From: Macrostomum lignano
Lineage: Eukaryota
Assembly: GCA_002269645.1 (NCBI GenBank)
Contig: NIVC01001985.1
Coordinates: 156,236 to 215,985 of the forward strand
Reading direction: 5' to 3'
DNA length: 59,750 nt
A program made the position numbers and the translations under genes. The notes beneath the pieces were generated by a model, which searched no databases, had not been told where the DNA came from, and was given only the letters and a program-made list of their open reading frames with translations. Below, piece after piece: positions 1,123-37,500 of the stretch (the stretch's first letter is position 1; each line of letters starts with the position of its first letter).

Positions 1123-1475
1123 TTAGAAGTCGGTGAGTCGCTGCGTTGGGTAAGTCTGAAATGAAATGAAAAATCAAGGCCAGTAATGTATGAATTATTA
1201 AATGCATTCAAGAAGTGCCTAGATTGTTTTCTTAACTCACCAAAATGCTCGGCTCCAATGCATAGCCATACTTAATCATCTCGATGGACACGTTGGCCGA
1301 ACAAAGACTACAGAGCAGTTGTACGGCGGCTGAAATTATTATTAGGGTTAGGGTTGTAAAATATATACTACAATACCGGACCAAGATAAAATGCATCCTT
1401 AATACTAGCTAGTAGTAATGTAGTAGTTAGTAGTAGTAGCAGTAGTAGTAGTAGTAGAAGTAGTGGTAATAGTAT

Positions 1476-1526
<51 letters not shown>

Positions 1527-1618
1527 AAGTAGTAGTAGTAGTGGTAATAGTAGTAGTAGTAGTAGTAGCAGTAGTAGTAGTAGTAGAAGTAGTGGTAATA
1601 GTATTAGTAGTAGTATTC

Positions 1619-1678
<60 letters not shown>

Positions 1679-1727
1679 GTATTCGTAGTAGTAGTAGAAG
1701 TAGTAGTAGTAGTAGTAGAAGTGGTAA

Positions 1728-1820
<93 letters not shown>

Positions 1821-4807
1821 CAGCAGTCTTAAATGTCTCGTACTAGGAATGCCTATGAATCTATTAACAAAGCGTGTATGCCTTAATGCGTGTCTGCACA
1901 TTGCTTGCAATAGTTTGTTTACCTCGTCCAGCAAAGTGCGCACAATTTGCACCGCCTTCGGCTCTGAGCTGTTCGTCATCAAATCGCAGAAAAAATTGCT
2001 AGCCGCCTCGCTCCACTGGCCGTTCGCATCCGTCGGCTTCAAACAGTCCAGATAGGCCAACGCCGTCAACTGACTGCAGGCGTCGGCAAATTGCCGCTTC
2101 AGATAATACAGATCCGTTAGGCTGACAATTTCTGAGCCGCTAGGCGGCTCGTCTAACGGCCGGACTCGAACCCGGCCGGCCCGGGGAGCGCCGTCGAATC
2201 CGAGCGCTTGGACGCGGATTAGTCGGCCATTGGCGCCGCCCAGTCTGGCAGCGCACAGCAGACCGCCTGTGGCTGCGTGACGACGTGAGATCGGCTGCCA
2301 ATCAGCGCAAGCTTTCATGTCGGCTTGGAGGCGTCGGCGCTGTTCGTCTAGCCGGCTGCTATGCACAGAGAGCAGCAGGTCGTCTGGGCAAGTGGCCTTC
2401 ACGCTCACCTGTGAAGGTAGTGTAATACTGTAATATAGTAGCTATTGTACTTGCAGCCATGCACCTACATGTACAGGGCTATTGAGACACCTAGTAGGGC
2501 GGTTAGACAGCGACTCTGGAGTCTGGTAGATTCTAATGAGTCTGGTGGACTCTGATGAGTCTGGTGGATTCTGATGAGGCTGGTCGATTCTGAAGAGTCT
2601 GGTAGATTCTAATGAGTCTGGTGGACTCTGATGAGTCTGGTGGATTCTGATGAGTCTGGTGGATTCTGAAGAGGCTAGTGGATTCTGAAGAGGCTAGTGG
2701 ATTCTGAAGAGTCTGGTGGATTCTGATGAGTTTGGTGGATTCTGAAGAGTCTGGTGGATTCTGATGAGTTTGGTGGATTCTGAAGAGTCTGGTGGATTCT
2801 GATGAGTTTGGTGGATTCTGAAGAGTCTGGTGGATTCTGATGAGTTTGGTGGATTCTGATGAGTCTGGTAGATTCTTATGAGTTTGGTGGATTCTGAAGA
2901 GTCTGGTGGATTCTGATGAGTCTGGTAGATTTTGATGAGTTTGGTGTATTCTGAAGAGTCTGGTGGATTTGTACGATATAGAGTAAAAGCAAGTCCAACT
3001 TACCCTGACAGTGCCAGTATTCGGATCGGCATATTCCGCTACAGGCAGCGGCTGCAGCTGGCAGCCAATGGGTACACAGTCGGCCGGAATTCCGTTACTA
3101 CCACTGTCCCCGTCGCCGTACGTAGACCAGGTGTCGCTCCGATCCAATTCGCTAATGCATGTATTGGTCATGGACTTCAGACCAACGGACGAGACGTCGC
3201 CGCCGCCGCCAGACGATGAAGACGAGGACAAAGGCGGCAGAGGTGGTGAATACAACTGTAGATTTTGCAAAGGTTGATGCAGCTCTTGAGGAAGCTTCGG
3301 TAGCTGCTCGTCTTCGGGCAGTTGCTGCAGTGGCTGCTGCTTGATACAGTTAGCCGGCAATTCGTTGCTGAAAAGCATAACGCATCGACTGCCGTCAATT
3401 TGACTGTCGAGCCTGACATGAACCTAACGTAAACTCATATCCTTAACCATAACGCTACTAACCTAACCTAAACCCTATAACCTAAAATCTAAAACGTAGA
3501 TTTCACACACGATTTTTCCCTAAGTAAAACATAAAAACAAAAAATTTATCTAGGTTGATTCATAATAAAAATTCGTAATAACAACAATATAATTAATTAC
3601 ACCTGCCCTACTGGGCAGTTTTGCAACAGACAGCTCAGCCCTAGCTAATTCAGGGTGAACTGAAGCAATGCAGAGTTAAGTGTCTTGCTCAAGGACACAA
3701 ATTGTTCCAAGTGAGTTGAGAATCGAACCCCCGACCTTTCCTGCGTGAGTCCGACGCTCTGACCACTAGGCCACAACCCCTAGCCTATGGGTTTAGTTAA
3801 GTAAATAAATAAGGTTAAATACATTAAACGGACTCCTAAATAGCTGTAATTGATGACATTGCCATTGAAATGCTTTGGGAATCAGGATGCAAAAATGGCA
3901 CTCGGATTTCTGATGAAAAAATCCGCAGATAATTAAATATGACTCACCTAGCAGGCGGTGCTGGTCGCAGGCTGTCGGCCAACTGTACCAGCGGACAGGC
4001 GCCTAATCGAGGCACCAGTCGCAGTCGCTTCTCCGCCTTTACCATCGCGTCGAAGCTGAGAAATCCCAGCTGCCGACAGGGCTCGAAGCCGTACTGGGAG
4101 CAATAGGCCTCGGATAGCTGATCCAGTGGCGCCGGGCCGTCAGGCCAGTTGGCCACCATATTGACCAGTTTATCGGAGTTCGGGTCGGTGACGTACAGGC
4201 CAGATTTAGCCGGCATCAGCCTGTGGTCGCCATTAGGCGTCTCAATGATGTCAATGACGCCGCAAGATTGCAGGAATCGCATAAATGATAGCATAGAATT
4301 GCAGGCAAACTGGTCTAGACGCAGTACAAAACCGTAACGTTGAAAATAAAGCCCGCCAAAGTGACCTAAACTGCAGCCTTCGCCGTTTTTAGCAAAGAAT
4401 TCTTCAACTAATTTGGCTATACGATTTCGCACCTGTTGCGGACAGCTGGGATTCCGATTGGCCGACTTTTTTTGAAAGCTAAAGCGACTTTTACCGCCGC
4501 GACAGCTTTTATTTTCTGTGTTAATTTTCTCGATAATGCGTTTGGAAGCATGGTTGGGCGGCTGGGTGCTTTTAGCGCACATGTTGGCGCCCACTCTGTA
4601 CATCGTCAGAGTGCCTGGCAGTGCAACTCTGATTAGCTCTTCAACGCTGCTAAAACCGTGTTCACGAAATGGCACCGGATGACCCATAGTTCTCTCGTAG
4701 GCTTCGGCTAACGATTGAAGAGTCACGTGACTGCCCGACTTGGTTGCCAGGACGTGAATAGAAGCTGAAAATACGCTTTTGATAACTTCAATGCTTGTAG
4801 GAGCCAT
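1123..4807 (-). CDS. TDRD5: LOTUS(OST-HTH)x3 + extended Tudor protein, TDRD5/Tejas-like piRNA-pathway factor; 5 exons, about 600 aa
   Basis: Exons 4807-3948, 3367-3004, 2408-1923, 1329-1241, 1155-1123, all GT-AG. Exon 1 has three LOTUS-like repeats (LAEAYERTMGHPVPFREHGFSSVEELI; FGGLYFQRYG..FACNSMLSFM; LSEAYCSQYG..LGFLSFDAMV). Exons 3-4 give one extended Tudor (LCAAR..RVQAL..WSEAASNFFCDL..NVSIEMIKYGYA). Splice phases agree except for a one-base conflict at exon 3/4. AATAAA at 1092-1087. One Tudor favours TDRD5 over TDRD7. Confidence 0.78.
1410..1820. repeat. (TAG)n microsatellite in TDRD5 intron 3
   Basis: Direct reading; source of the spurious poly-Leu and poly-Val ORFs. Confidence 0.97.
2510..2968. 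repeat. 19-bp minisatellite (GAGTCTGGTGGATTCTGAW) in TDRD5 intron 2
   Basis: About 24 tandem units. Confidence 0.95.
3596..3785 (-). mobile_element. tRNA-derived SINE with CORE-like body
   Basis: Minus strand has A box TGGCCTAGTGG and B box GGTTCGATTC, then GTGTCCTTGAGCAAGACACTTAACTC, which resembles the MIR/CORE motif GTGACCTTGGGCAAGTCACTTAACC. Second copy at 30773-31007. Confidence 0.75.
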
Positions 4808-7418
4808 CCCAATTGGTTTGTTGGTTCATGAATTGGAATATTGCCATTGTAGTGCCAGATTACAAAGCACAATTAGGAATAACCTGATGGCAGACAAGGG
4901 AATCAAAGATAAGTTCTTTAGCTTAATTTACCCATATGACATATTGCAGCCAAATTAACATGGATCACATACATCTCTATGAATTGACATAAAGAGGATA
5001 TGCAAAAAGGTAATAGAAAGCCTAAAAATCAGTCAACAATTAGAGATGGAGTATTAGAGATTAGAGTAATTCCTAAATTTTAAGAAGTATTGATTTCATA
5101 ACCATATATGTTTTGTCTAAGAACCTATATATCTATAACTTTCAATAGCAATATCTGTATCTACAATGGAGCTCTATATAAATAGTTTTGGTTGCAACTA
5201 TGTGAAAACAAATTTTGGCTTAACTATAATACTATATAATCTATCTCTATTAGGTCTTATATCACCTTCACCTAACAATTATTACTATGACACTAGCAAA
5301 AACTCTAGCCATATTGATTTTGCATATATGGGACCATTATATAGAACATTCCAATGATCATGAGATAAATAGGCCTAGGATAATTGGCAATCTTTCAGAT
5401 AATAATTACCAAGTAAATTGACTATCACCTTAATAACAGTTTTAAATAAATAAAGTAGAAGCTCTTAAAATAACATTACAAATGGTTTCTAGTATTAGCT
5501 CTTTTATAAATTAGCACTTTCCCTTGTGGCTTATATGTTATATCAGTTTTGGATAAAATCAATTCAAATATTAAAATTGTCCTAAAATGATCATATTTTA
5601 AAAATATAATAACTTTGTATATTTCGCATCTGGACTCTATATATTTAGAGAAATAGGGTCACATTGAGCTTTAAACCACTTGCACAGATGTCTCAAATGA
5701 ACTGGCTCTATTGAATAAGACCTCAGCTTTAATTCTACATATAAACATAGGCCTAATACAAAAAACTATAGGTTAAAAAGTAGAATGTAATATGTATCCC
5801 CCTGAATTTTGAAGATAGGCCTAATCATTTCAATATTACTAGTCTATAGTATAGACTCTATAGACTCTATACAAATGATTATTAATTGAAAGTATAATAA
5901 ATATTTTTGTGGAATATTTAATATATACTTGATGCAATACCTAATTATATCTATTAGAATAGAAGAGGTTGAAGCATTTTATTTTTAATTGTTTTTAGCA
6001 GTTTTGGAACATGATCATTTTTTTCTAAAAGTTTCATAGAAATGATTGCCTTTTAAAACAAATAATATATAGACTGACTATTTAAATGATATAAATATTA
6101 TAGGTTATTCTATTAGAATAGAACTAAATTATTAGGATATCAAAAATACTTTTATAAAATAGAGTCAAATTTCAATGGTGATTGTCTATTGAAATTGATA
6201 TATTAAGCAATGATGATCATTTAAAAGAATAGGCCTATTAGACAATTATATAACTATTATTATCAAATCAAAAGTTAAGACAAAAACTTTTGGCTAAATA
6301 ATTTGCCTTTGGCAAATCAATTGGCTAGCTATTTTTATTGATATTCATTAATAGTTCAATAGGCCTGCCTAGTAAATTTTAATTGCATGTTTTTAAATAT
6401 AGAGTACTTAAGCATAGCAGCCATGTCTAGTCTATAATATTTATGCTTATAGGCACAGCTATAATCATTGATATAAAATGTGTGTTCTATAAGGCTCTCT
6501 CATAATCAAATGGTGGCTTAGTGGATAAGATGATTGTCTTGTGATTGCATATAGCAAGGTTTGAATCCTAAGTGGTTGTAGTTTTTTTTTAATTTGAATT
6601 TTTTTTAGCAAATAGAAATTTTTGTGTCTTAAACTTTTTAAGTTTTTTAATTAATGACTGACTGACTGACTGACCATACATGCGCAACCTTCAAAATTTG
6701 GTCATCCATGCAACTTAGTTTTAACAAAAATGCGACATAGTTTTTGGCCAAAAATGCAACTAACATATAAAAAACCCTAGCATAAGTAGTGTAAAGCAAA
6801 ATTAACGCTACTATAGGTAGGGACTTCAATGAGGCAAAATTATCCCGTTCAAAATTGTAAAAATGGCAAAAAGGGCCTATCTTTCTACACTTATAACTAT
6901 TAAAAGGAGTAAAGTGTGAAGTAAAGTTAATATACTTTGAAAAGGCAACATTTTTTTCTTTCAAATAAGACCAGCTTTATTGAAAACCATTGATTTATTA
7001 CAAAGCTATACTTACTCAAAGTTTTGCTTTCTTTTCAAAAAAAAATGTATGTGTGACGGTTGCAAAAAATGCACATGTTTCGGAATTTGAATTTTTCTAA
7101 GAAATGCATCATTTTTTACGCAATGAAACGATTGTAATACAAAGGGAATACATTAGAGAACATTTTAAAGACTTTTCAGCCATATTTGTTATTATGCAAG
7201 TAGGAGAAAAACATGTTTTTTTTAGTTTTTATCATTTTACTCACTGAAGCTCCATAGCGCCGCAGTTCTCCCATAGCTAATCAGACGCCCACATTTGTTA
7301 GCTACAAGACGAAAAAAGAATCATGAAAATCGGTTGCTGCGCAATGCTGCGCGAGCAGTTTAAAGTCAGCCATCCCATTTGTGATCAAAGTAGGTTTTGC
7401 CCTTGAATCATTAGGGCA

Positions 7419-7858
7419 ATCATGAACTTTCCCGCGTTTAATTATTTTTTATCTTGTTCGTAAATTTCCAGCTTTGAAGACATTGAAGACATGGCCGGAA
7501 GACCTGCCGCACCAACAACTATAGTCGAGCCAGCCGATGTTCTTCCTGCCATTGAGCTGACCGAGTTGGACCTCAACCACCGTGAGCTGGCCCTGCTGAC
7601 GGATGACACAGCAGTCCAGTGGCTGGCACGGCACGGACTTCTGCGGAACAGCATCGACTGCCCGAACTGTGCCACCGCAATGTCCTATTCTGGATCTGCC
7701 ACTACTACCCCTGCTGACTGTGACTCTTTATTAACTAATAATCGTGGTACCTAGTGTTTTTTATGCCCCTGAACTTTAATAATACTAATTTTCATCACCC
7801 CGCACTTAAAGGTTACGAACAAGATAAAAAAATAATTAAACGCGGGAAAGTTCATGAT
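7419..7858. repeat. 45/46-bp inverted repeat pair (7419-7463 and 7813-7858) bounding a 440-bp cassette
   Basis: ATCATGAACTTTCCCGCGTTTAATTATTTTTT(T)ATCTTGTTCGTAA and its reverse complement differ only in one homopolymer base. Confidence 0.93.
7491..7700 (+). pseudogene. N-terminal zinc-ribbon fragment resembling ISXO2/IS1595-like (Merlin-type) transposases
   Basis: AVQWLARHGLLRNSIDCPNCATAM fits the AxxFLxxxGLL...CxxCxxxM start of these enzymes. Acceptor TTTCCAG at 7472. No DDE core follows. Confidence 0.55.
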
Positions 7859-7980
7859 CGCCTCATTAGTTTGTCATTCGGCTGTTTTTCTACTTGACCA
7901 TTATGATTATAACCGATGCTTGCATTTTAGGCAGCTTGCACATGCTTTCGTGCATTTCAGAAGCGATCAGGTTTCGGGGA

Positions 7981-8946
7981 TTAATCGTCATCCTCTAGCA
8001 TGTTCAGATCACCAGCGTAGAAGTCCGAGTACAGGTTGTACTCGAATCTTTCTCCAGGGAAATTGTCGAACTCGACCTCAAACATCCTGGACAGGATGTC
8101 CAAGTTCCGAGCCGTCGGCAACTCGCGGATGACGGCGCCCTCTTCCCACTGCTCCCCATCGGCATACAAGAACTTCACTTCAATTCTTCGTCCAGGCAGC
8201 TCTGGGCAGGACTCGAGCGTCCGAACTGTGGTTTCAGGAGCCTCGTCTGCAGCATCGTCATCGTCCTGAATTCTCCATCCTCGTCCCCTGCCTCTACCGC
8301 GTCCTCGGCCACGTCCTCGGCCGCGTCCTCGGCCACATCCTCGGCTGCGTCCTCGGCTGCGTCCTCGCTGAGGCGCCGGCGGCTGGACCTCACGTGGCTT
8401 CAGCTTCTTGGCCACCAGCTCACGGACTCTTGCGCTACATTCTTGGGGCGGCAGAACGTCTCCAGACGCAGAAGTGGAGGCAGAAGGGACAAGCTCCTGC
8501 TCTTGAGCATTCAGGATGTCAAGGAGCTCCCCCAGCTGATCCTGAAGCTGAGCTGTGCTGTGCTGCCTGCCTCTCTCCGAGAAGTGCAGCAGCGTAACCT
8601 TGCCTGGTGGCAGCGGAGCCTCTAAAATGTGTTAAATAAATTGCTTAGAATAGATAGCAAAATAGTCCCATGTATTCGTAGCTTACGCATGGCCTTGTGA
8701 AGTCGAAGCTGGGCTTTCACAGCCTGCTCGACGCTGTTGGCCGCGAGGGATGGGATGACCGCATTGTATAAGGGCCAAGTTGCTTCTGTCTGCTTAGGAG
8801 CAATGGCAGCCTCAATGACTCCAACTTCCAGCTGCTGCTGGTTGAGGGCAGCCTGAACAGCCATGCGGCCACCACTCTTAAACAGATCAAGAGCAGCCCC
8901 AATTGTCATGGAAGCTGGTAGGTCAGACATGCTGCCAAGTGCTAGG
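7981..8946 (-). CDS. 3' part of a spliced transposon-associated gene: helical region, RG repeat, C-terminal Spindlin/Ssty-like Tudor domain (5' exons absent)
   Basis: Exons 8946-8687 and 8621-7981 joined in phase by a 65-nt GTAAGC..TAG intron (AVKAQLRLHKAMQ|APLPPGKVTLLHFSERG). Ends LPGRRIEVKF..WEEGAVI..FEYNLYSDFYAGDLNML, like the Spin/Ssty end YxYxLLDDYxxGDLxI. Confidence 0.65.
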
Positions 8947-10694
8947 CTGGAAAGTAAACTTAAGGGTAAAGCCAAGGTATATCAAACAAGACTATGTAAG
9001 CTTTTAAAAGCATTATCATTAAGACAGTTACAGTTGTATGTCAGTTGAATTAATTCTGAATGCTGAAAAGTTGTTATATCTTATCATTTATATATAAATG
9101 CAATATTACTGCAATATTAGGTAGTGGCTATGTCATATGCATTCATGGATTATATGTATTCTTATATCAAAAAGTGTGCCCAATGAAAAGTCTTTTTTAG
9201 CTATAAAAATTTGAAAAAAATGGGAAAAAATAAGACCTCTGGCAACAAAATCCATCAAGAAATAAAAAAATTATAGCAAATTGATTTTCAAAAGTTACAT
9301 AATCTCCGAAAAATGATCACAGTGCCCTATGGAAAAAATACATTACGAGCTAGTACAAAAAATGTAGCACAAAATGTACCATAACTTTTTTAATACCCAA
9401 CCAATTTTTATAAATGAAATGTCACCATGCTCATAAAGCATGGATCTATATGATGAAGTACAAAAAATGGCCTAATTTTTAGTTTTAAAAACCTCACTGA
9501 AGTCCCTACTATAGGTAAACGGTAGGAGTAACTATGACTTTACTATGACTATAGTTATAGACTATGACTATGACTAATAAGACATAACTATGACTATGTC
9601 TTATTAAGTCAAAATGCCTCGTCAGCTACATAGTACTACTACTTTGGTATTTTTTGGGTGGGCACTTTTGCAACTTCCTTGTTTGGCCGCCAAATTGGTC
9701 AGCCAAATCAGCCGACTTGGCCAACTGTTGTGCATGTATGTGACTGACTGACTGACTTTTTTAGTAGCTACATATATTATTATTGCAGCTGCACTTTAAA
9801 AAAAGATTTTGTGTTATTCTTAAAATTAAAATTAATTTAATTTAAAAAATTCAAATAAAAAACTTTGACTTTTCAATTGATTGATCTTTTCATTTGATCA
9901 ATGATTATATACATGGCATGGCAGCCATGCCCATAAGCTCTAATATTAGAGACATGGCCACCCACCCATGTTTTTAAGTGTAAATCAATTCCATATTCAT
10001 GACACAACCATCCACTATGTCTCTAAATATGAACCCATTCAATATTAATGACATGGCTACCGTGCAAGTTTCATTGACACAGTGGCCATGTCTAATAGTG
10101 ACTAGGTCTATTTATAGACATAGCAGCCGTGTCTATAATGCAAATACTTATTTGAATTTTTGACACAGCCGCTTTCATAAGTAGGCCGTGTTTTATTTGA
10201 ATTTCTTTCAAGCTTTTAACAAACATTTTTACTTAAAAACATTATTCACGAAAAATCAGCCTAAATATCAGACAACGGTCGTTTATTCTGTAAAACAAAC
10301 ACACCAACTTAAAAGACAGAGAATTGAAAAAACAAAACAATTATATTTAAATCATACGAAAGTCTCCGTCCCCGCACCACCTGACCTGACCTGATCACTC
10401 GATTGCAGTCTCACGTCAGAAGCGTGGACGTGTGGCTGTTGAACGTTTGCAGATTTTTGCTGATTTAATTATATGAAACTGGCGTTTTCTTAATAAGAAA
10501 AGTCCATCTCTTTTATTGCCATTTTTATTCCTTTCTTAAAATGAGAACGCATTAATTGATCATTTTAGTTAGGCCTAGCATTTCTCGTTTCAGCTTTGTG
10601 CCTTGGCTTTAGTTCACAAGTCAAAAGTTTTTTATAGATAAAGAGTTTAAACACTACAAGCAACTTTCTTATTTTATCTTTTGAGGAATTCAGA

Positions 10695-13600
10695 ATGGTA
10701 AGTTAGGGCCTAAGTTGAAACTGGTAAAGTTTTAAATGGTAAATTAAACTAAATAATCATTCAGTCTAATTATGTTTATCATCCTTGTCAGACTATGTTT
10801 TATCCATTCTTAGAAATTGAAAGCAAATGAAAGTAATTTAAACGAAAAACTTTGTCCTTAATTACATAAATAAACCATCAAAGCTAGTTCACATATGCTT
10901 CACTTACGACTATTGCCTAATTATCTTTTCATTGTTAGTGACAACTTTTATAGCAGCTATAAAAATATCTCATTTAACTAGCATAATTTATTACGGCAGT
11001 TATTGTATGGCTAACTTTAATTATACGAGAAATAGTTTTAAATTGCATAAAAAATTAATTCCAGATGCTATCTATTTGATTGTTAATCGATGTACATGTA
11101 AAACTTTATGCAAGTGATATTATTTGTTTGCAAATTTAAGCACACATATGACTGGGAATTTTTATTGCGTACAAAAATGCTGCATTGTATAGTATTTAAG
11201 TGAAAAATATATTATTAAGTAGACTTACTGCATGGTCTATTCCCTAACTTGACATATTTTTAAAGACAATTTCTAAAATATTTTTAGATTCATTTTATGC
11301 TACTGTTCAGCAGGCAGGGTAAACTTCGACTACAAAAGTGGTACATCTCTCAGACGGACAAGGCAAAAAAGAAGATCACTCGAGATTTGGTCACTCTTAT
11401 TCTTGCTAGAAAACCAAAGATGTGCTCCTTTTTAGAGTGGAAAGAGTTGAAGATTGTGTATAAAAGGCAAGGACACACAATACCACTGTCAGCGTCATTC
11501 TCAGATATCGCATATTTAAAAAACTCTTCATGCCATTGGTACTTTTACAGATACGCGAGTCTCTATTTCTGCTGCGCTATTGAACAGCAGGACAATGAGC
11601 TTCTCTGTCTCGAAGTCATACATCGCTATGTTGAACTTCTTGATAAGTACTTTGGAAGCGTAAGTGCTCGTACTCAATGTACTATTCAGAAGTAGATTGA
11701 CTTTGTGTTTTTTATATACAAACAAAACAGGCTTGATTTAACTTCTACAGGTCTGCGAGCTGGACATTATATTTAACTTTGAGAAAGCCTACTTTATGCT
11801 GGACGAGTTTATACTAGGCGGTGAGGTTCAGGAGACAAGCAAAAAGAACGTGTTGAAGGCCATCGCCGCGCAGGATCTGTTGCAGGAGGTAAATTCTTAA
11901 TTATCAAGGATGTTTTTTGTACAGTGCTTGCACTCCAAAAGTGCTTCTTATGTTTGCTTGATTCAATAAATGCTTCTTGTTTATTTTTAATTAACAACGA
12001 ATGAGAAACATAGCAAAAATCTAACATGCACATTCATTGCTGTATGCTTATTTTTTGCATTTAACTTTTGCGTTTAGCTTTGTCCAACTCTGCTGTTTTG
12101 ACTGTCTCAAATGGAATTCAGGTGTCTCACAAGTGTCTCAGATGTTTAAACAATGTAGATCACACATGGATTTCAGGTGTCTCATATTCCTGGAATTTTC
12201 CTTGCACACACAATAGGAGTTAAGATGTCTTACTTGGCGATTTCAGGTGTCTCACAATGGATTTCAGGTGTCTCACAATGGATTTCAGCTGTCTCACATT
12301 GGATTTCAGCTGTCTCACAATGGATTTCAGCTGTCTCACAATGGATTTCAGCTGTCTCACAATGGATTTCAGCTGTCTCACAATGGATTTCAGCTGTCTC
12401 ACAATGGATTTCAGCTGCCACACAGGGGATTTCAGGTGTCTCAAGATGGATTTAATGTGTCTCACAGGGAATTTCAGGTGTCTTACGATGGATTTCGGGT
12501 GTCTCACAATGGATTTCAGGTGCCTCACAATGAATTTCACTGCCAATCCTAATATTCCACATGGTAAATGAAGAATGTGCTTTTAGAAAGTTCAGTAGTA
12601 TTTCGCGATTAGTTCAAACTTAGCAGAGAACTGTTAAGAATTAAGCCATTTAGGACACTAAGCCACTAGGACGGAAGCTAGTAGGACTGTCCTTCCGCGC
12701 AACCAAATTCAATTCAATAAGCGACTCAACCGCCCTCCAATAAATCTAGAACGATGCCCTTTTGGAAGCGCTAAAAGAATACGGATTGATTTAACCGAGT
12801 TGCAAGAACGCCATCATGCGATTCTCTATGCATAAGTCTACTATATAGTACTATATAGAACGAGCGAAAATATTTGCGTTATCGCAAGCCGAATTATTAC
12901 TCAGAAATTTGTTTCTTTGTCAGTGTTAGAAGATCCTTGTCTTTGTTATTTCCTGACAGTTCTATTATAAACTGTTTGTCACTATACTATTAATTATATG
13001 GCTGCCAATCCTAAACTGACAAATTCACTTATTTTCAAACACGATGCACCGCATTGATGATGTTGATTTTGTACTGTATCCCACCTTCACGTGCATTCCA
13101 GCATCAATTTCATTTATATAAGTACTGTCAACTGACTTCTATAAAAAATCTAAACCATTTTTGTTAAAACTTTCAGCTATATTTTGCTAGAATTTTAAGT
13201 CCGAATATTGCAGTATTAGCGACTCGTACGAGATTAAACAAATCGAAGATACGACACAGATTTATTTTGAATAATCGGTTTTAATGACGTGTTTTTTGAA
13301 AGTTGAATCTAAAACAAATTAAACTTTGGTATATCACTTTATTATATTATGCTTATAGTTTCTGTCAGATTGACTGTCTCGATCCAAATGCTCGTAAAAT
13401 GTGTTTTACCTACCTGCCAATTGCCCTTAAATGTAACTTAATGAGAAATGGAATCTGCACATTCTCGGTCGGGATCTCGCAAGCTGGTTTCTCAATTTTC
13501 AACAGCTTCAATTTTGAACAAATAGCTGACATTCCTTTTACCCGATTGTACGTGTCTAGGTATTAATAAAATATTAATGTTTTCAATAATCATTATTAGT

Positions 13601-16505: not shown

Positions 16506-18106
16506 GCGATCTCGCTAGTGTATTCCGAAGCAGAATTGGGGCCTTCAAATAATTCCCCATCATCTTGAAATGTTACGCGTCCTTCTTCTGTATGCTGCAA
16601 TGAAAAGCAGATGTGTAGCAGAAAAGCACTCAGTTGCTGAGGACACCGCATCATGCAGCATCTCTCGCATCTCCCTGGGAAGTTGCTAACTCAAAGGGGC
16701 GTGCGTGATCATAAATTTGAGTCGGGACTGTCTATCAGCCTCCGCTATGCGCGCGGCGGCATACAGTCTTAGCCACTATATAGCTATATCCTTATTTTGG
16801 CCGAGTCCAGTCCGCCGGACAGCCAGAAGCTGCGATGATAGAAAAGTCGAGGAAGAAAACTCGGACGGCCAAGACAGAGAAGTCATAAATATTCAGCCAA
16901 GTAGTGCATTCGCTGCCCCCGCTGCCTGCCCCCTTCAATTCCTTTTTCTTCTCCGAGCTCTCACGCCTCTCTCCCCATTTTAATCCCGCCGATTGCCTCG
17001 GCTTTCGTAATCCCGGGGGGTCTCTCGCGGGGCAGGGAGGCCGGGTGGGAGCTGGAGAATGGGAGGGGGAGAGTATTAGGAAATAAAGTCAAATTCGAAA
17101 CGACCTCGCTCCGCGCTGTTCCGCCGAACAATCGGCACCTCACATACAGAGAAAATGCCTGCGCCTAATTCTGCTGAAAATAAAATCCCAAACTGCATGA
17201 GCGGGTTTGCGGGAATTCCTCTCACTCAGCTTTCCCACTCCCTCTTCCCCTCTTGCGGCTCTCACACCCGATCCAACCCAAAAAACTCGCCCACTTCCCC
17301 CTCTCCCACAGAAAAAGAAGCAGAAAGATGGCGTTAGAGAGTGAAGAGTCCAAGAAATAGATTTGGCCTGCCGCAGAGAGAGTGGGGAGAGAAAAGAAAT
17401 TGGCAAAATACAGAAGACTTCTTCTGAGCCAATACGGCTTAGCGGCCTATGCCCGACGCGCTCGCTGAGCTGACCGAGCGCCCCTCCCACTGGCGGCCAG
17501 CGCCAGCGCCCCGGAGACTCATAAAAGACTCGCCATGCAGGCAGCACTAAGGGCCGGCTGCCAGCGCTCCCTCCCGCCGAGGCTTAATTGGCTTCTCTGT
17601 GAGGGGGGGGGTTGGGAGGCGGGCAGCCCGCGCTCAGATTCGCCTCAGCTTTCCCTCGTTCCGTCCCATCTCTCCCGAAAATGCCCAACGACTAACGGCC
17701 CCTACGCTGCAGTTTATAGCTGCTGCATTCATATGGCTCCCCCCACTGCAGTAGCCGCTGCCTCCGCTCCCTGCATTGCCCCTCTCTCATTCTCTTTGCT
17801 GTCTTTATACCCCAATGGACGCGCACAGTTTTTTGACATCAACTTTGACAAAGCGAGCTTCATTACATCGGCCGCTGCGATAGAACCGATCGGCATGGAA
17901 CTGGGAGACGCTGGCAAGTTGAATATGACTATTCCATTGTGCTCCTCATGATAGCTAGGCGCGGCCTTAGCTTTTGTATTCCTATTTGGACTGGTTAAAA
18001 AGCTCTCAAGAGAAAAAAGTTTAAAACAAGCATTGGTGCAGAACTGCAGGAGATACACAACTGGTGCTCATTTTTAGAGCACAGCAGAAATGAGTGCGTC
18101 TACATC

Positions 18107-19070
18107 TAGTTTTGTAGCAGCACTGAGCTAAGATCGAGTAGTTTTGTAGCAGCACTGAGCTAAGATCGAGTAGTTTTGTAGCAGCACTGAGCTAAGATCG
18201 AGTAGTTTTGTAGCAGCACTGAGCTAAGCTCGAGTAGTTTTGTAGCAGAACTGAGCTAAGATCGAGTAGTTTTGTAGCAGCACTGAGCTAAGATCGAGTA
18301 GTTTTGTAGCAGCACTGAGCTAAGATCGAGTAGTTTTGTAGCAGCACTGAGCTAAGATCGAGTAGTTTTGTAGCAGCACTGAGCTAAGATCGAGTAGTTT
18401 TGTAGCAGCACTGAGCTAAGATCGAGTAGTTTTGTAGCAGCACTGAGCTAAGATCGAGTAGTTTTGTAGCAGCACTGAGCTAAGATCGAGTAGTTTTGTA
18501 GCAGCACTGAGCTAAGATCGAGTAGTTTTGTAGCAGAACTGAGCTAAGATCGAGTAGTTTTGTAGCAGCACTGAGCTAAGATCGAGTAGTTTTGTAGCAG
18601 AACTGAGCTAAGATCGAGTAGTTTTGTAGCAGCACTGAGCTAAGATCGAGTAGTTTTGTAGCAGCACTGAGCTAAGATCGAGTAGTTTTGTAGCAGCACT
18701 GAGCTAAGATCGAGTAGTTTTGTAGCAGCACTGAGCTAAGATCGAGTAGTTTTGTAGCAGAACTGAGCTAAGATCGAGTAGTTTTGTAGCAGCACTGAGC
18801 TAAGATCGAGTAGTTTTGTAGCAGAACTGAGCTAAGATCGAGTAGTTTTGTAGCAGCACTGAGCTAAGATCGAGTAGTTTTGTAGCAGAACTGAGCTAAG
18901 ATCGAGTAGTTTTGTAGCAGCACTGAGCTAAGCTCGAGTAGTTTTGTAGCGCAACTGAGCTAAGATCGAGTAGTTTTGTAGCAGAAATCGGCTGTGCTTG
19001 AGTAGTTTTGTAGCAGAAATCGGCTGTGCTTGAGTAGTTTTGTAGCAGAAATCGGCTGTGCTTGAGTAGT
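18107..19070. repeat. 32-bp minisatellite (AGTAGTTTTGTAGCAGCACTGAGCTAAGATCG), about 30 copies
   Basis: Highly homogeneous direct repeats, no spacers. Confidence 0.97.
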
Positions 19071-20106
19071 TTCAAACGTGCCATTATATTCGACATTTCG
19101 AGTAGTTAAAAAACTAAAACAGGAATGTCTTCGCTCAGTAATTATTATCTGTCCCTCGTGTTTAGAGTCGAATGCAGTTCTGACTGTTGATGGGATCGCA
19201 CCTGCTCAGCAACCTGCACGGTCAAATAACTGCTATTCAGTTTTAGGGAATCATAGATGGGCTTTTTCTGTCCAATATGGCTCACTACCCGCTCTGAACT
19301 TTCACCGCTAGTAGCAGCCGCTTTTCAGCCAGTGAGTTTCTCCATACTCGCTCACTGACCCGCAATGCAGTCCTGAAGCTAGCCAGCCATCCCCCCATGC
19401 TGTCCATTAATCCTCGGGGCTGAAAGCTCAGCTGGAGCACAACCCCCTGGCTTTAGTTAGTGGCTTGTGCCAAACTTGTTTTATGACACACGATGGAGGG
19501 CTGCAGGGAGGAGTGAGGAATTGGGGGCAGAGAGAGAGGGGAGATTTCAAACCTGCATGCAACCCCCGAAAAAAGTTGCTTAGCACAGAAAGAATGAGAC
19601 TCCGCCTGCGTGAGCCGCTGCAGGACTTTCTCAGCTCCCCTAGTAGGTAGTCACAGGAGTTTTGAAAGAAAAAAACTACAGTGTTGTGCTGAAGCAGCTG
19701 CCAAGAGAAGACGAAAGAAAATGAGTTGCAAAGACTCGCGAGCTCGCATGCTAAGGCTTCGAGTCCGCCTGCGGGCACGCACGTCTCCAACTTGAGCCGC
19801 GAGTGGTCGGATTAAGATATTTATGGGGAGAGAGAGAGAGAGACGCGACTAGAAGAGGGGGTAGCCTGCGACGGATCCTTGAACTTCGTCTTTAATCCCC
19901 ACTCCGATGGCTTGTGCTGGGAGGGAGCGCTAGGATCCTCTATACTCTGCACACTTTCTCCTCGCGACATATTTGGAACGAGTCGGACCAGGAGCTCAGC
20001 TTAATGATCTGCAGCGTGTGTGCGTTGCCCCAGCTCTCTGCCGCGGGTAGGCGTAGGCAAATACTGAGTTCGTTTTGTCTTCTTCTAGTCTGACTGGATG
20101 CAACTT

Positions 20107-20790
<684 letters not shown>

Positions 20791-20791
20791 G

Positions 20792-20875
20792 TAATCTTGC
20801 ACGGAATCGAACCTGGGCCCTATGGCACGAGAGTCGGAGGCAATAAACGCTGAGCTGCTCTGCACCCCCGGATGC
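20792..20875 (-). mobile_element. tRNA-like SINE head abutting the (CTAA)n tract
   Basis: Minus strand GAGCAGCTCAGCG..CCGACTCTCGTGCC..CCCAGGTTCGATTCCGTG; no complete cloverleaf. Confidence 0.5.
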
Positions 20876-27330: not shown

Positions 27331-28244
27331 GGATAAAATGATGCCTCTGAAGTATCAAGCTTCATCAAAAACCATTCCCTAGACCATACGCAGAGCTCTG
27401 AAGGGAAGATGAGAGCTCAGCTATACATATAAGCTTTACAGTTAGCTTATTACTTATTAAACAGCGGCGCAAGTGTGCTGAAGAATATTCCAACAAACCG
27501 GCCCCCAAAGGCCTGGACATAGAAGATAACCATCCAGAATCCGTCACTACAAGCGTAATATAGAATTTAATAAATTGTAATGCCCATCGGGCGGACCCAG
27601 AACGCGCTCAGAATGGAATACAGCAAGTGGAATAGCTGATTAAGCCGACACGGTCTCCAGCTGCAGGCGAAGCACAAGTGACAATCGAAATTTCTCACTC
27701 TCGAGAATGCAGTGAAGCTACAGCATACGCAGCTTCTATTGCGAGAAGGGAATCGTTCTTTCTTTTAAGAAGCAGAAATTCAATCTGAATATTTGATTAC
27801 TCCTAGCTAAGGGGCAGAGAGCCAATTTTTTATCCCTGGACTTTTGGGGCTACTAGACCGTTTGCTATGTGTATCTACAGAAAATTTCTAAATAAAATTT
27901 CTTGTCAAACTACTGCTGTTAATTTGGGTGATCAGTAGTAAAATATGTGCATAAATACGACACAAACCAAGCCAACGCATTCTATATTTAACTATAAATG
28001 AACATACAAAAAGAGCACCACATAGTCAACTGTATAATTTGTTTCCGAAAAAAATATTACAAGCAATTGGAATTCTGGGAAAGCACAATAGATTTTACTA
28101 GAGCTACAAGTAATTTACAATGCATTTAGAATGGGCGGATATAAGCTGAGTTCAGGCCTGGTGTTGCCTTAGACAGAAAATCAGTACTCAGATGTCTTAA
28201 AAATGTTTCATGGTGAGGATGTCTCACAGATTTCAGGGCTGGGG

Positions 28245-29027: not shown

Positions 29028-29051
29028 GGCAGACCTACAGTGTTCACGAGC

Positions 29052-34527: not shown

Positions 34528-37500
34528 TCAAGCGCAAGCATGAACATCTTGCAGCTTCTCCATGGCCTCGGAGACCAGGCTCAGCTCCGCAATGGAGTCG
34601 CGGACAACCTTGCGAATCTGCTTGTCAGTGTCAAGCACTTCCACACTCTGTGTGTAGGGATTGTAGCGCACGGTGAACGGACGGCCAGAGCACCTGCAGA
34701 TTGACACAGGGGATAGGCGCGTATACAGACACACTGACACACTTACAGATAGGTTAACAGCCGCACAGGCAAACAGATAGATAGATAGACAGACATACAG
34801 GTGAACAGATAAGCACGTTTCAAAGTCTCACTTAGAATAAGCGGCAATCTTTCTCTTGGCCTCTTCAAAAGACTTGGCCACAAAGTACACGGGCTGGTAC
34901 TCTGTGATTGGGTACTGCTGCACGGCGGTCTCCGGTGGCTCAAAGCTGCGCACAGTCGGCTTGTCACTCAGGCAGTACTGCAGCTCGCCGAATGAGCTCA
35001 ATAACCCGGCGCCGTAGGCCTTCAAACTGCCGTCCTGCATGCATAGGCCGAATTCTACGGTGAACCAGTAGCAGGTAGCCAGCTTCATTATGAACTCGTC
35101 GCTGGCGCCGAGGCTGGCCAGGCCGATCTCCTGGGAGAACTGGGCAAAGTCCGGATCGGCGAATAGCGGCGCGTGGCCCAGCAACTCGTGGCAGACGTCC
35201 GGCTCGGGCGTGTACAGCGGGACACTGTGGTGCCTGCCGAGTTGAAGGGAAACGTGTTAGTATAAACCCTGACAGCTCTTAGCAACATTTGGCACTTTGA
35301 GTAGAAAACCAGACAGACCCTACTCGTGCCAACGTTGTCTGACAAATCCTGACAGTCTCAGGATGAAGGACGATAAAACCTCACCATTCTCAAACAAAAC
35401 ATGAAATCGTCAAAACCACAACCCGACAACCTCATACTCGTACAAAACCTGACGAGACACCCTCCGACAGAATCTGACAACATCAGAGAAACACCTGACA
35501 TTCTCGAGCAGAACCTGAAAAGCAAAAACCTGACATCCTCTGATAGAATATACCATTTTCTGACAGAACCTGAATCCCTTAAAAAGCTGACAGAGAATCT
35601 GACATCATCTGACAGAATCTGACAGACAACCTGACATGATCCGAAAGAACCTGATATCCTCCAAAAAACCTGAAAACCTCATACTTATCCTAGCAAACTA
35701 TGACATCCTCCGTCATAAATCTGACAGCTCCCAACAAAGATGCGACAATCTCTTTGACAAAAACATGATAATCTTAAACAACCTCAAGGGAAATCCATAC
35801 AATTATAATTACAACTTTGAAGAATTGCATTAAGCGGCTTTGATAAGTATGTATCAGTGCGCCCAACTTTTACTAACAGTAGTAAATTAAAAATAAGCAT
35901 TGTTATAGTAAATTACCTAATGTACTGAGTAGAATGGAACACCCGGAAAGCGAGACCGGCCAAGAAGTCTCTCGAGCTGAGCAGGCCGGCCACAGGGCGG
36001 AGCCGGAAGCCGGTGCAGTCCTGCAGAAAGTCGGACACATCCTGCAGCTGGGGAATATTATCCTCTCTGTAGCCGCAATTGTCCATCAGCAAAGGAAACA
36101 CGTGATTAAACTCGCGACAGGCGTGAGTCGGGTAGAGTGTCACCAGCTCGCGGAATACGGTGCGCCAGGTGTTAATCTGGTAATTGATGCGCGCTTAGCT
36201 TAAATAGGCATTACAAAAATCTGAGCAATCAGTGAGCTACTGCAGACATTCTCACCCACCTGACCAATCAGTGAGCTACTGCAGACATTCTCACCCACCT
36301 GACTAATCAGTGAGCTACTGCAGACCATTCTCATCCACCTGACCAATCAGTGAGCTACTGCAGATCTTCTCACCCACCTGACTAATCAGTGAGTTACTGC
36401 AGACATTCTCACTCACCTGACCAATCAGTGAGCTACTGCAGATTATTCTCACCCACCTGATCAATCAGTGAGCTACTGCAGACCATTCTCACCCACCTGA
36501 CCAATCAGTGAGCTACTGCAGATCATTCTCACTCACCTGACCAATCAGTGAGCTACTGCAGATTATTCTCACCCACCTGATCAATCAGTGAGCTACTGCA
36601 GATCATTCTCACTCACCTGATCAATCAGTGAGCTACTGCAGACCATTCTCACCCACCTGACCAATCAGTGAGCTACTGCAGATCATTCTCACTCACCTGA
36701 CCAATCAGTGAGCTACTACAAACCATTCTCACCCACCTGATAAAGCTAAGGTGAGATACAAAACCATCCTATTTACCCAACCAGTGAGTCATATAAGTTG
36801 GAGTTAAAACCCAGGCTTTACACCACTATTGAGTACCTCTTGCTCGCTGTACTCCACCCGGGGAATTGTGTCCCCATGCCGATAATTGAAAGCGATATCG
36901 GCAAAGTACTGCCGACGGTCCCTGTACACTTTGTCGGTGAAGCCGGGATGATCGGAGTCCAATTCGTTGCCATAGCTGAGTATCTGGTTAGCAAACCGGT
37001 CCAAGTCTTTAATCTTGCGCGGAAACCAGGGAATTGAGTCGTCCGGAGCGTCGGTCTGGCTGCCAGGACTCAGCACCTGATTATTTTGGGTAATTAGGAT
37101 GAGGATTAAGAAGCAAATCAAGACAGAAATTTAACGTTTTTAGTTCAAATTCGCGCTAAAAGCTTATACATACGTGCGCAACACTGCCCCACGTAGTACT
37201 AATTACATAACGAGGCATTTAGCCTTAAAAATACAGTTACAGTTTTTCCTGCCGTTTAACCAAAATCACGTCAATCTTGCTTAGGTTTCTTTCATAGGTA
37301 AGTCGCATCTTTGGTCAAAAAGTAAATCAGAGGGGTTGCTCATGTATGATCCACTACAAGATTGCGGAGATACACAACTCGCTGAGCTGCTACCATATCA
37401 CGGCAGGGTAAACTGGAGCTCAGTTAAATTGACCGCTCGTTTACGGTGGCTGTCTTTGTATGCTGACCCAAGCCGCTTATCAAGCTTTGACTACATTGAT

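What the first reader, a model, noticed from the sequence alone, without database searches (positions are those of the whole stretch)
7981..8946. Transposon-borne spliced gene with an RG repeat plus a Spindlin/Ssty-like Tudor domain
Seen: an open, in-phase spliced frame inside a TIR element ends in about ten RG dipeptides, an acidic linker and a domain with the Spin/Ssty-like terminus. Established: Spindlin Tudor domains read methylated H3 tails and SPIN1 takes part in piRNA-directed transposon silencing; RG repeats are methylated by PRMTs and bound by piRNA Tudor proteins. Inference: a chromatin-reading integration module or a mimic/antagonist of host silencing. The TDRD5-like gene 1.9 kb away may be coincidence.
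Basis: partly seen in the sequence, partly recalled or inferred. Interest (0 to 1): 0.72.

Follow-up and report, generated by a model that had tools for sequence, protein, structure and literature searches.

The report
Transposase remnant with Spindlin-like reader domain
A cut-down copy of a flatworm DNA transposon still encodes the tail of its transposase: an arginine-glycine repeat followed by a single Spindlin-type Tudor domain that probably reads methylated histones, a domain not reported on a cut-and-paste transposase in the papers I could search.

Summary
On the minus strand an ATG at 8930, a 65-nt GT..AG intron (8686-8622) and an exon ending at the stop at 7983-7981 give an in-phase 294-aa protein. 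It has 12 RG dipeptides in a 30-aa tract, an acidic linker and a 70-aa C-terminal domain.

That domain is a real Spin/Ssty homologue:
- A family profile finds only Spindlin-1 to -4 in the PDB (E 1e-7 to 3e-5).
- hhalign against SPIN1 gives 92.7%, on repeat 2.
- The AlphaFold model (pLDDT 81) has Spindlins as its top 42 Foldseek hits.
- The four SPIN1 H3K4me3 cage positions are F/W/F/F here.
- No member reaches Pfam's Spin-Ssty model.

The gene is transposon-borne but is not a cargo gene. It is the last two exons of a roughly 900-1100-aa transposase. Full-length relatives occur in Macrostomum lignano and in metagenomic eukaryotes. The catalytic core is missing here.

The copy lies in a 2.7-kb non-autonomous element (6818-9507) with TAGGGACTTCA inverted ends and an 8-bp target duplication. 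That element is nested in a MITE and itself holds a third small element.

The hAT assignment rests only on motif order, ends and duplication; profile tests failed. Chromatin tethering is inferred, not shown.

The parts
8687..8930 (-). Coding exon 1 of the truncated gene (ATG 8930; 81 codons + 1 nt). Its last ~30 aa (..W..SLAANSVEQAVKAQLRLHKAM) are homologous to the post-catalytic region of full-length family members.
8622..8686 (-). 65-nt phase-1 intron (GTAAGC...TTTTAG). Position and phase are conserved in the L001 full-length paralogue.
7981..8621 (-). Last coding exon including the stop (7983-7981).
8500..8613 (-). Family-conserved motif LPxGK..LL.FS..G...s.AQLq.qL.E(L/V)L(D/E)IL, function unknown.
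8278..8367 (-). RG tract (aa 167-196, 12 RG dipeptides), encoded by an in-frame 12-nt tandem repeat.
8233..8265 (-). Acidic linker DDDDAADEAPE.
7984..8193 (-). Single Spin/Ssty-like Tudor domain (aa 225-294). The cage-equivalent residues are F232 (8170-8172), W240 (8146-8148), F266 (8068-8070) and F274 (8044-8046).
6818..9507 (-). Inner non-autonomous, hAT-like element that carries the gene. The ends are TAGGGACTTCAATGAGG (6818-6834) and CCTCACTGAAGTCCCT(A) (9492-9507/8), matching 16/17.
6810..6817 (.). Target-site duplication ACTATAGG, left copy. The right copy is at 9508-9515.
   Evidence: same geometry in L001 (ATCTAAGA)
9508..9515 (.). Target-site duplication ACTATAGG, right copy.
9290..9507 (-). 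5' subterminal non-coding region, 72% identical to the sibling element in L001. It is better conserved than synonymous sites of the coding part.
6675..9740 (.). Outer MITE-like element into which the inner element inserted. The TIRs are CATACATGCGCAAC (6675-6688) and GTTGTGCATGTATG (9727-9740), flanked by TGACTGAC on both sides, within (TGAC)n.
7415..7862 (.). Third, innermost element. It has 49-nt inverted ends and is flanked by TCATTAG (7408-7414 / 7863-7869). It carries an 87-aa ORF (7491-7754, +).
37169..37348 (.). 180-bp MITE with the same TIR as the outer element. It was used to show the empty site.

Best explanation
What it is. The window holds an internally deleted, non-autonomous copy of a DNA transposon, in what is probably Macrostomum lignano. 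The family's transposase is about 900-1100 aa. It has an N-terminal coiled coil, a DDE-type core with hAT-like motif order, a conserved linker, often an RG tract, an acidic stretch and one C-terminal Spin/Ssty Tudor-like domain. The window copy has lost the coiled coil and the whole catalytic core. It keeps only the last two exons as an intact 294-aa frame.

How it most likely works (inferred). In the full-length enzyme the Spindlin-type barrel has an aromatic cage equivalent to SPIN1 repeat 2. It probably binds a methylated lysine, or less likely a methylated arginine, on a histone tail. This would tether the transposase to marked chromatin and bias where the element lands. The basic RG tract would add non-specific nucleic-acid binding, nuclear import or a methylation-regulated contact.

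The truncated copy cannot transpose by itself. It is mobilised in trans through its conserved ends. Its reader-only product, if made at all, could at most compete with the full-length enzyme.
For: Shown by tools:
- In-phase spliced 294-aa frame, with the intron position and phase conserved in a distant paralogue.
- Homologues carry the same C-terminal domain at the end of long transposase-like proteins. P0010 is 907 aa in a single ORF. The L001 minus-strand copy is multi-exon and about 1137 aa by conceptual joining. L006 has core exons followed by P0004.
- RG tracts sit at the same position in the window copy, L001 copy 2 and P0004.
- Spin/Ssty homology. The 8-sequence family profile against 177,635 PDB sequences hits only Spindlin-1/2/3/4, at E 1.4e-7 to 3.2e-5; the next hit is at E 0.099. 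Repeat 2 scores 28.8 bits against 3.3 and 1.2 for repeats 1 and 3. hhalign against SPIN1 50-262 gives 92.7% probability and E 4.3e-7 over 73 columns on repeat 2.
- Fold. The AlphaFold2 model has pLDDT 81.4 and five strands. The top 42 Foldseek PDB hits are all Spindlins, with probability 1.00, TM 0.65-0.68 and about 24% identity; SGF29 follows.
- Cage. The SPIN1 K4me3 cage is F141/W151/Y170/Y177 (PMC3967050). These align to F232/W240/F266/F274. Across 8 family members W is invariant, two positions are always aromatic and the fourth is aromatic in 5 of 8.
- Purifying selection. pN is 0.36-0.40 while pS is saturated at 0.74-0.86.
- Transposon structure. There are 16/17-nt TIRs plus a perfect 8-bp duplication here. 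A sibling in L001 (TIRs 9217-9232 / 12188-12203, duplication ATCTAAGA) shares homologous subterminal regions at both ends.
- Joining the flanks restores a MITE that aligns across the junction with the copy at 37169-37348.

Inferred: the hAT-like class, histone binding and target-site bias.
Against: - No family member reaches Pfam Spin-Ssty, or any Tudor model, at E<=10. The best is Agenet at E 0.11-0.17 in one member.
- The domain is a single repeat, whereas Spindlins are integrated triple repeats. It is unknown whether one repeat folds and binds alone.
- The fourth cage position is H, G or V in 3 of 8 members.
- I could not inspect cage geometry in the model.
- The transposase class is unproven. 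Pfam gives nothing. The PDB profile search gives nothing for the core. hhalign against Hermes gives 0.4-0.5%. The AlphaFold core model is unusable at pLDDT 36.
- No TIRs were found around the full-length L001 copy. The link between these ends and this transposase therefore rests on two truncated copies.
- RG tracts are missing in P0010, P0003 and P0001. In the window the tract is a slippage-prone 12-nt repeat, so its length may be accidental.
- There is no expression or binding evidence.
Confidence: 0.6

Rival explanations
1. Dead relic. The window copy is a recently deleted, non-functional fragment. Its frame is open only because too little time has passed. Nothing is made from it and it has no role.
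For: - The catalytic core is absent.
- The upstream 560 nt are AT-rich non-coding sequence.
- A near-identical relative, P0001, shows the lineage is young.
- Internal deletion derivatives are the usual fate of cut-and-paste elements (established knowledge).
- The sibling in L001 kept only the last exon and has no RG tract.
Against: - The 885-nt frame is intact and the splice sites are intact.
- An acceptor-like TTTCCAG lies 19 nt before the ATG.
- Two anciently diverged lineages both survive as '5' end + last exon(s) + 3' end' forms with open frames.

This rival concerns only the window copy. It is compatible with the family-level explanation.
Confidence: 0.5
2. Silencing decoy. The RG tract, once methylated by PRMT5 like PIWI N-termini, and/or the Spindlin-like cage titrate host Tudor proteins or compete with a host Spindlin. 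This would blunt piRNA-guided silencing of the element.
For: - RG tracts recur in three divergent members.
- Methylated RG motifs are the ligands of germline Tudor proteins, and SPIN1 has been tied to piRNA-directed silencing in mice (established knowledge, recalled, not checked here).
- M. lignano expresses PIWI/piRNAs in stem cells as well as in the germline (PMC4604429, title and abstract seen).
Against: - There is no direct evidence.
- The tract is missing from several members with an intact domain.
- The domain and tract are covalently part of the transposase. That fits a targeting or regulatory role for the enzyme itself more simply.
- The weak Pfam hits (EBNA2 core, FoP, C19orf84) are composition matches to the RG run.
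Confidence: 0.1
3. Host gene. The frame is a domesticated or ordinary host gene that merely lies between chance inverted repeats.
For: - The frame is intact and spliced.
- Purifying selection acts at family level.
- The region is gene-rich with ordinary host genes.
Against: - The TIRs come with a perfect 8-bp duplication.
- A second copy elsewhere has the same ends, a different duplication and homologous subterminal regions.
- The empty site can be reconstructed.
- Several divergent paralogues lie in one M. lignano contig.
- GC content differs sharply from the surroundings.
Confidence: 0.05
4. Barrel without reader function. The C-terminal barrel is used as a DNA- or protein-binding SH3-like module, as in retroviral integrase C-terminal domains. 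It would not be a methyl-mark reader.
For: - SH3/Tudor-like barrels are versatile.
- The fourth cage position varies.
- Pfam Tudor-type models are not reached.
Against: - Sequence-level homology is specific to Spindlin repeat 2, the H3K4me3-binding repeat.
- W is invariant, two further cage positions are always aromatic, and the D184 and GDL equivalents are kept.
Confidence: 0.15

Closest known systems
Spindlin-1 to -4, Spin/Ssty repeat 2 (the H3K4me3 reader)
   Same: - Significant profile-to-sequence homology.
- The same five-strand barrel comes out as the best PDB match.
- All four K4me3-cage positions are aromatic in the window copy.
- The ...Y.L..D(Y/F)..GDL.I(L/M) end motif and an acidic/serine tail are shared.
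   Different: - One repeat instead of an interlocked triple repeat.
- Fused to the end of a transposase.
- An extra 7-residue loop between strands 2 and 3.
- Does not reach the Pfam PF02513 threshold.
hAT superfamily DNA transposons (Ac/Ds, Hermes)
   Same: - An 8-bp target duplication in two independent insertions.
- Short TIRs starting TAGGG, as at one end of maize Ac (from memory).
- Motif order: D in ..TDGT(S/T)KK.., D in ..(S/T)DR..VN.., C-x2-H in ..CG.H.I.N.., E in ..(S/G)ER(I/M)F.. Hermes has ..DLWTDN....VTDRGANV....CSSHLLSNV....SERTFS.., with similar spacing.
- Deletion derivatives are mobilised through conserved ends.
   Different: - No statistical support for homology of the core.
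- A coiled-coil N-terminus, with no detected BED or other zinc finger.
- A C-terminal RG tract plus a Tudor-like domain.
Chromoviruses (Ty3/gypsy integrases with a C-terminal chromodomain)
   Same: A mobile-element enzyme ends in a Royal-family methyl-mark reader, which is thought or shown to steer integration (established knowledge).
   Different: Those are retroelements with a chromodomain. Here it is a cut-and-paste DNA transposon with a Spindlin-type Tudor domain.
RG/RGG tracts of PIWI N-termini, Sm tails and RGG-box proteins
   Same: A run of RG dipeptides of the kind methylated by PRMTs and bound by Tudor domains, nucleic acids or transportin (established knowledge).
   Different: No evidence of methylation or partners here. 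The tract is variable or absent between family members and sits on a minisatellite.
Ds-like / KP-like internally deleted elements
   Same: An internal deletion keeps the ends and part of the transposase frame.
   Different: KP keeps the N-terminal DNA-binding part and represses. This copy keeps only the C-terminal reader part. A regulatory effect is conjecture.

Membership tests
Spin/Ssty (Spindlin) Tudor-like repeat | Match to Pfam PF02513 (Spin-Ssty) at the gathering score | tested here: not met
   No hit at E<=10 for the window protein, its last 90 aa, or any of 8 family members.
Spin/Ssty (Spindlin) Tudor-like repeat | Statistically significant sequence homology to bona fide Spindlins | tested here: met
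   The family profile against PDB sequences gives 17 Spindlin sequences at E 1.4e-7 to 3.2e-5 and nothing else below 0.099. A 3-sequence full-length profile gives E 4e-5. hhalign gives 92.7% and E 4.3e-7.
Spin/Ssty (Spindlin) Tudor-like repeat | Four core beta strands plus one extra strand forming a Tudor-like barrel | tested here: met
   The AF2 model has pLDDT 81.4 with strands 17-24, 27-39, 51-56, 63-66 and 77-80. The Foldseek top 42 PDB hits are all Spindlins, TM about 0.67.
Spin/Ssty (Spindlin) Tudor-like repeat | Aromatic cage (SPIN1 F141, W151, Y170, Y177) | tested here: met
   These align to F232, W240, F266 and F274. Family conservation is 7/7, 8/8, 8/8 and 5/8 aromatic. This is at alignment level only; geometry was not inspected.
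Spin/Ssty (Spindlin) Tudor-like repeat | Three tandem repeats packed into one globule | tested here: not met
   There is one repeat only, at the extreme C-terminus.
Spin/Ssty (Spindlin) Tudor-like repeat | Binding of methylated histone peptides | not testable with these tools
   Needs peptide arrays or ITC.
hAT superfamily transposon | 8-bp target-site duplication | tested here: met
   ACTATAGG in the window and ATCTAAGA in the L001 sibling. Both require the right end to be read as ...CCCT. If the end is ...CCCTA, the duplication is 7 bp.
hAT superfamily transposon | Short TIRs of the YARNG type | tested here: met
   TAGGGACTTCAATGAGG / TAGGGACTTCAGTGAGG, and TAGGGACTCCAGTGAG / TAGGGACTTTAGTGAG in L001.
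hAT superfamily transposon | Transposase with an RNase H-like DDE core, insertion domain and hAT C-terminal dimerisation region, detectable by profile | tested here: inconclusive
   There are no Pfam hits and no PDB hit for the core. hhalign against Hermes 174-612 gives 0.4-0.5%. The AF2 core model has pLDDT 36. Only motif order and spacing resemble Hermes D180/D248/CxxH/E572.
hAT superfamily transposon | Full-length copies flanked by the same TIRs | tested here: not met
   No TIR/TSD pair was found around the full-length L001 copy within the flank held. L002 has a TAGGGATGCCACTGAG palindrome, but its relation to the gene is unclear.

The most novel reading that the evidence does not exclude
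A family of cut-and-paste DNA transposons chooses its landing sites by reading a histone methyl mark with a Spindlin-type cage, perhaps H3K4me3 at promoters. Its reader-only deletion derivatives, such as this copy and the L001 sibling, are kept as trans-acting competitors or as decoys for host Tudor/piRNA factors. A corollary is that single Spin/Ssty repeats have been moved around animal genomes by transposases.
Probability: 0.2. Interest if true: 0.8.

Novelty: new variant of a known kind. Interest (0 to 1): 0.58.

Why it matters
Retroelements are known to carry chromatin readers that steer integration, such as the chromodomains of chromoviruses. I found no report of a Spindlin-type Tudor domain, or of an RG tract paired with one, on a cut-and-paste transposase in three full-text searches.

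If the cage reads a histone mark, this family would be a natural example of mark-guided DNA transposition. It occurs in a flatworm whose stem cells run a piRNA pathway and which can be made transgenic. It would also provide a compact single-repeat Spindlin module for structural and tool use.

If the domain does not bind methyl marks, the finding reduces to an ordinary deletion derivative of an unclassified DNA transposon.

Tried and rejected
- Pfam on the whole protein gave only composition hits to the RG run (EBNA2 core, FoP, API5, C19orf84), which I rejected as low complexity.
- Single-sequence phmmer of the last 90 aa against the PDB gave only noise, such as sialyltransferase at E 0.4. A family profile was needed.
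- The word-indexed homologue searches were nearly blind. One search gave 2 hits, one of them an RG-only false positive (P0002). One search returned only the query. One search gave 3 short hits.
- The metagenome contig scan failed with alignment A3. With A9 it gave one bacterial false positive, a dephospho-CoA-kinase-like ORF with 'GGEEWCEGVVVV'.
I have no copy census and no transcript evidence.
- Classifying the catalytic core failed by every route: Pfam on whole proteins and segments, PDB searches with single sequence and profile, hhalign against verified Hermes 174-612 and AlphaFold2 with a 2-row alignment (pLDDT 36.5, unusable, not sent to Foldseek).
- A search for TIR/TSD around the full-length L001 copy gave only an AT-rich chance pair.
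- The L002 match 'GAGGGATTCCAATGAA' just after the P0010 stop is part of a ~69-nt tandem repeat, so I rejected it as a TIR.
- Rfam found nothing in 5000-11500.
- The 87-aa ORF in the innermost element looked to me, from memory, like an IS1595/Merlin-type transposase N-terminus. Neither Pfam nor NCBIfam supports that.
Full report
WHAT IS THERE

The region 7981-8946 is coding on the minus strand. An ATG at 8930 opens an exon of 244 nt that ends at a GTAAGC donor. An intron of 65 nt (8686-8622) ends in TTTTAG. A second exon of 641 nt runs to the stop at 7983-7981. The two exons join in phase, with the split codon C|AG, and give 294 aa.

The coding part has 58% G+C against 30-33% in the flanking non-coding DNA. 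Residues 167-196 read RGRSRGRSRGCGRGRGRGRGRGRGRGRGRG, which is 12 RG dipeptides. They are encoded at 8278-8367 by an in-frame 12-nt tandem repeat of 5.9 copies. Then come WRIQ, the acidic stretch DDDDAADEAPE (8233-8265) and a 70-aa terminal domain (7984-8193).

THE TERMINAL DOMAIN IS A SPINDLIN-TYPE TUDOR DOMAIN

Pfam does not see it. No Spin-Ssty or Tudor model is reached at E<=10 by the window protein or by any of eight family members. One member touches Agenet at E 0.11-0.17. A single-sequence search of PDB sequences gave only noise.

An exhaustive phmmer search of 1.84 billion representatives with the last 90 aa found seven real relatives. A profile of eight such domains (alignment A3) then hit only Spindlin-1, -2, -3 and -4 among 177,635 PDB sequences. 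The E-values were 1.4e-7 to 3.2e-5, and the next hit was at E 0.099. The match falls on Spin/Ssty repeat 2, at 28.8 bits against 3.3 and 1.2 bits for repeats 1 and 3. A three-sequence profile of whole proteins gave the same result.

hhalign of A3 against human SPIN1 residues 50-262 gave 92.7% probability and E 4.3e-7 over 73 columns, again on repeat 2.

AlphaFold2 on a seven-row alignment gave a confident five-strand barrel with mean pLDDT 81.4. Its top 42 Foldseek matches in the PDB are all Spindlins, with probability 1.00, TM about 0.67 and about 24% identity. SGF29 follows.

Su et al. (PMC3967050, read) define the H3K4me3 cage of SPIN1 as F141, W151, Y170 and Y177 of repeat 2. In the hhalign register these are F232, W240, F266 and F274 of the window protein. 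Across the eight family members the tryptophan is invariant. Two positions are always aromatic and the fourth is aromatic in five members. D184 and the GDL motif are also kept.

The limits are these. There is one repeat rather than three. There is an extra loop between strands 2 and 3. I could not inspect cage geometry, and there are no binding data.

IT IS THE TAIL OF A TRANSPOSASE, NOT A CARGO GENE

The same domain ends long proteins in three other places:
- P0010 is a 907-aa single ORF on a metagenome contig.
- A multi-exon gene lies on the minus strand of M. lignano contig NIVC01003425, locus L001, about 18.2-13.85 kb.
- A JGI metagenome contig, L006, has core exons that continue through an intron into P0004.

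Aligned together, these proteins share several features in order:
- an N-terminal coiled coil;
- ..TDGT(S/T)KK..;
- ..(S/T)DR..VN..;
- ..CG.H.I.N..;
- a long helical stretch containing ..RGNRLY.IF.. and ..AGCRAL..;
- ..LxDHLxGG..;
- ..(S/G)ER(I/M)F....P.M....RE......N..;
- a conserved LPxGK..LL.FS...AQLQ..L.E.L.IL motif;
- an RG tract in the window copy, L001 copy 2 and P0004;
- an acidic stretch and the Spindlin-like domain.

The window protein begins only after the ..ER.F.. block, so it has no catalytic part. The intron after ..AQLRLHK.. has the same position and phase in the window and in L001 copy 2.

Between lineages, synonymous sites are saturated (pS 0.74-0.86) while pN is 0.36-0.40. 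The frame has therefore been under purifying selection over a long time. In the held sequence, L001 copy 2 has a frame shift just before its RG tract. I cannot tell a real mutation from an assembly error.

WHICH KIND OF TRANSPOSASE

The order and spacing of the D, D, C-x2-H and E blocks resemble Hermes: D180 in DLWTDN, D248 in VTDRGANV, CSSHLLSNV, and E572 in SERTFS. The catalytic residue numbers are also from memory.

No statistical method supports homology of the core. Pfam gave nothing. PDB sequence and profile searches gave nothing. hhalign against Hermes gave 0.4-0.5%. The AlphaFold model of the core from two rows is unusable, with pLDDT 36.5. I therefore call the family hAT-like and rate that at about 0.6-0.7.

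THE ELEMENT AND ITS NEST

The gene lies in an element spanning 6818-9507. Its ends are TAGGGACTTCAATGAGG and the reverse complement of TAGGGACTTCAGTGAGG, matching 16 of 17. They are flanked by a perfect direct repeat ACTATAGG at 6810-6817 and 9508-9515.

A sibling element in L001 carries the last exon only (protein P0003). It has TAGGGACTCCAGTGAG / TAGGGACTTTAGTGAG ends and a different perfect 8-bp repeat, ATCTAAGA. The two elements share about 225 bp of 72%-identical 5' subterminal sequence and a weaker 3' subterminal similarity. The ends are thus better conserved than synonymous sites, as expected for sequences required in cis.

An 8-bp duplication and TAGGG ends fit hAT. The duplication is 8 bp only if the right end is read as ...CCCT; otherwise it is 7 bp.

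This element is itself inserted in a MITE-like element, 6675-9740. That element has TIR CATACATGCRCAAC and TGACTGAC on both sides, within (TGAC)n. A 180-bp copy of it lies at 37169-37348. Joining the flanks of the inner element gives a 368-bp sequence that aligns with this MITE across the junction, 51 nt at E 5e-5.

Inside the inner element there is a third small element, 7415-7862. It has 49-nt inverted ends and flanking TCATTAG, and it carries an 87-aa ORF.

SETTING

P0001 and P0003 are M. lignano proteins, and P0001 is 91% identical over the matched stretch of the domain. The window is therefore most likely M. lignano.

The nest lies in the 6.5-kb space between two divergently oriented host genes. 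One is a gene with three LOTUS/OST-HTH domains (ATG 4807, minus strand). The other is a clathrin-adaptor small-chain gene (11297, plus strand). The rest of the window holds ordinary host genes: gamma-tubulin complex component, aromatic amino acid hydroxylase and EI24-like. A landing site in a divergent promoter region fits a promoter-mark reader. It also fits the general habit of DNA transposons, and one case proves nothing.

MECHANISM

Shown:
- the architecture;
- homology to the H3K4me3-binding repeat of Spindlin;
- retention of the cage positions;
- purifying selection;
- transposon ends and duplications.

Inferred:
- In the full-length enzyme the domain binds a methylated histone residue and tethers the transposase to marked chromatin.
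- The RG tract adds nucleic-acid binding, nuclear import or a methylation-controlled contact, possibly with the element's own cage.

The window copy cannot move by itself. Whether its reader-only product is made, and whether it competes with the full-length enzyme or with host factors, is open. I give about even odds that it is simply a relic.

NOVELTY

Three full-text searches found no report of a Spindlin-like or Tudor domain on a hAT or other cut-and-paste transposase. The library is incomplete, and Repbase and Dfam could not be consulted.

I rate the finding a new variant of a known kind: a mobile-element enzyme with a chromatin-reader tail, carried here by an ordinary deletion derivative.

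Noticed in passing
window 7415-7862 (ORF 7491-7754, +): A 448-bp element with 49-nt near-perfect inverted ends, flanked by TCATTAG on both sides. It is GC-rich and encodes an 87-aa ORF (..WLARHGLLRNSIDCPNC..). From memory this ORF looks like the zinc-ribbon N-terminus of IS1595/Merlin-type transposases. Pfam and NCBIfam give no hit.
   Followed up: partly
window 6675-9740 and 37169-37348: A MITE family with TIR CATACATGCRCAAC and TTGGCCAA-like subterminal motifs. The large copy is flanked by (TGAC)n, with TGACTGAC on both sides. The 180-bp copy shows no clear duplication.
   Followed up: partly
window 1368-4807, minus strand: A host gene with three LOTUS/OST-HTH domains (E 2.9e-19), followed downstream by a Tudor-like stretch that Pfam does not call. 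Coding-strand tandem repeats (19-nt and 9-nt periods) produce long poly-L/poly-V ORFs at 1340-3060.
   Followed up: partly
L001 13850-14600 (minus strand): The full-length paralogue needs a frame shift just before its RG tract to join the body to the RG plus Tudor part. The annotated 940-aa model stops in the other frame. This is either a real pseudogene or an assembly indel.
   Followed up: no
L001 3400-5700: A 766-aa ORF with Pfam DUF1258 and CxxC motifs lies next to the two family copies. It looks like another transposase-type gene and is unrelated to P0010 by BLASTP.
   Followed up: partly
L002 6414-6446: A perfect palindrome, CTCAGTGGCATCCCTA-C-TAGGGATGCCACTGAG, on the contig that carries full-length P0010. 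Its arms match 13 of 16 positions of the M. lignano TIR and share TAGGGATG with the maize Ac end (from memory). It may be two abutting element ends.
   Followed up: partly
L001 10860-11010: A tRNA-like, SINE-looking GC-rich insert lies in the 3' part of the sibling element, after a poly-T run. I did not run it through the tRNA tool.
   Followed up: no
window 17979-19174, 19971-20900, 28242-29150, 39235-40126, 56579-57314: There are many long minisatellite arrays, with periods of 8, 21, 26, 30 and 32 nt, across the window. Some create spurious long ORFs.
   Followed up: no
window 11297-11695, 29801-32381, 34828-38508, 42301-42783: Ordinary host genes: clathrin adaptor small chain, gamma-tubulin complex component 5-like, biopterin-dependent aromatic amino acid hydroxylase with an ACT domain, and EI24-like.
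   Followed up: partly
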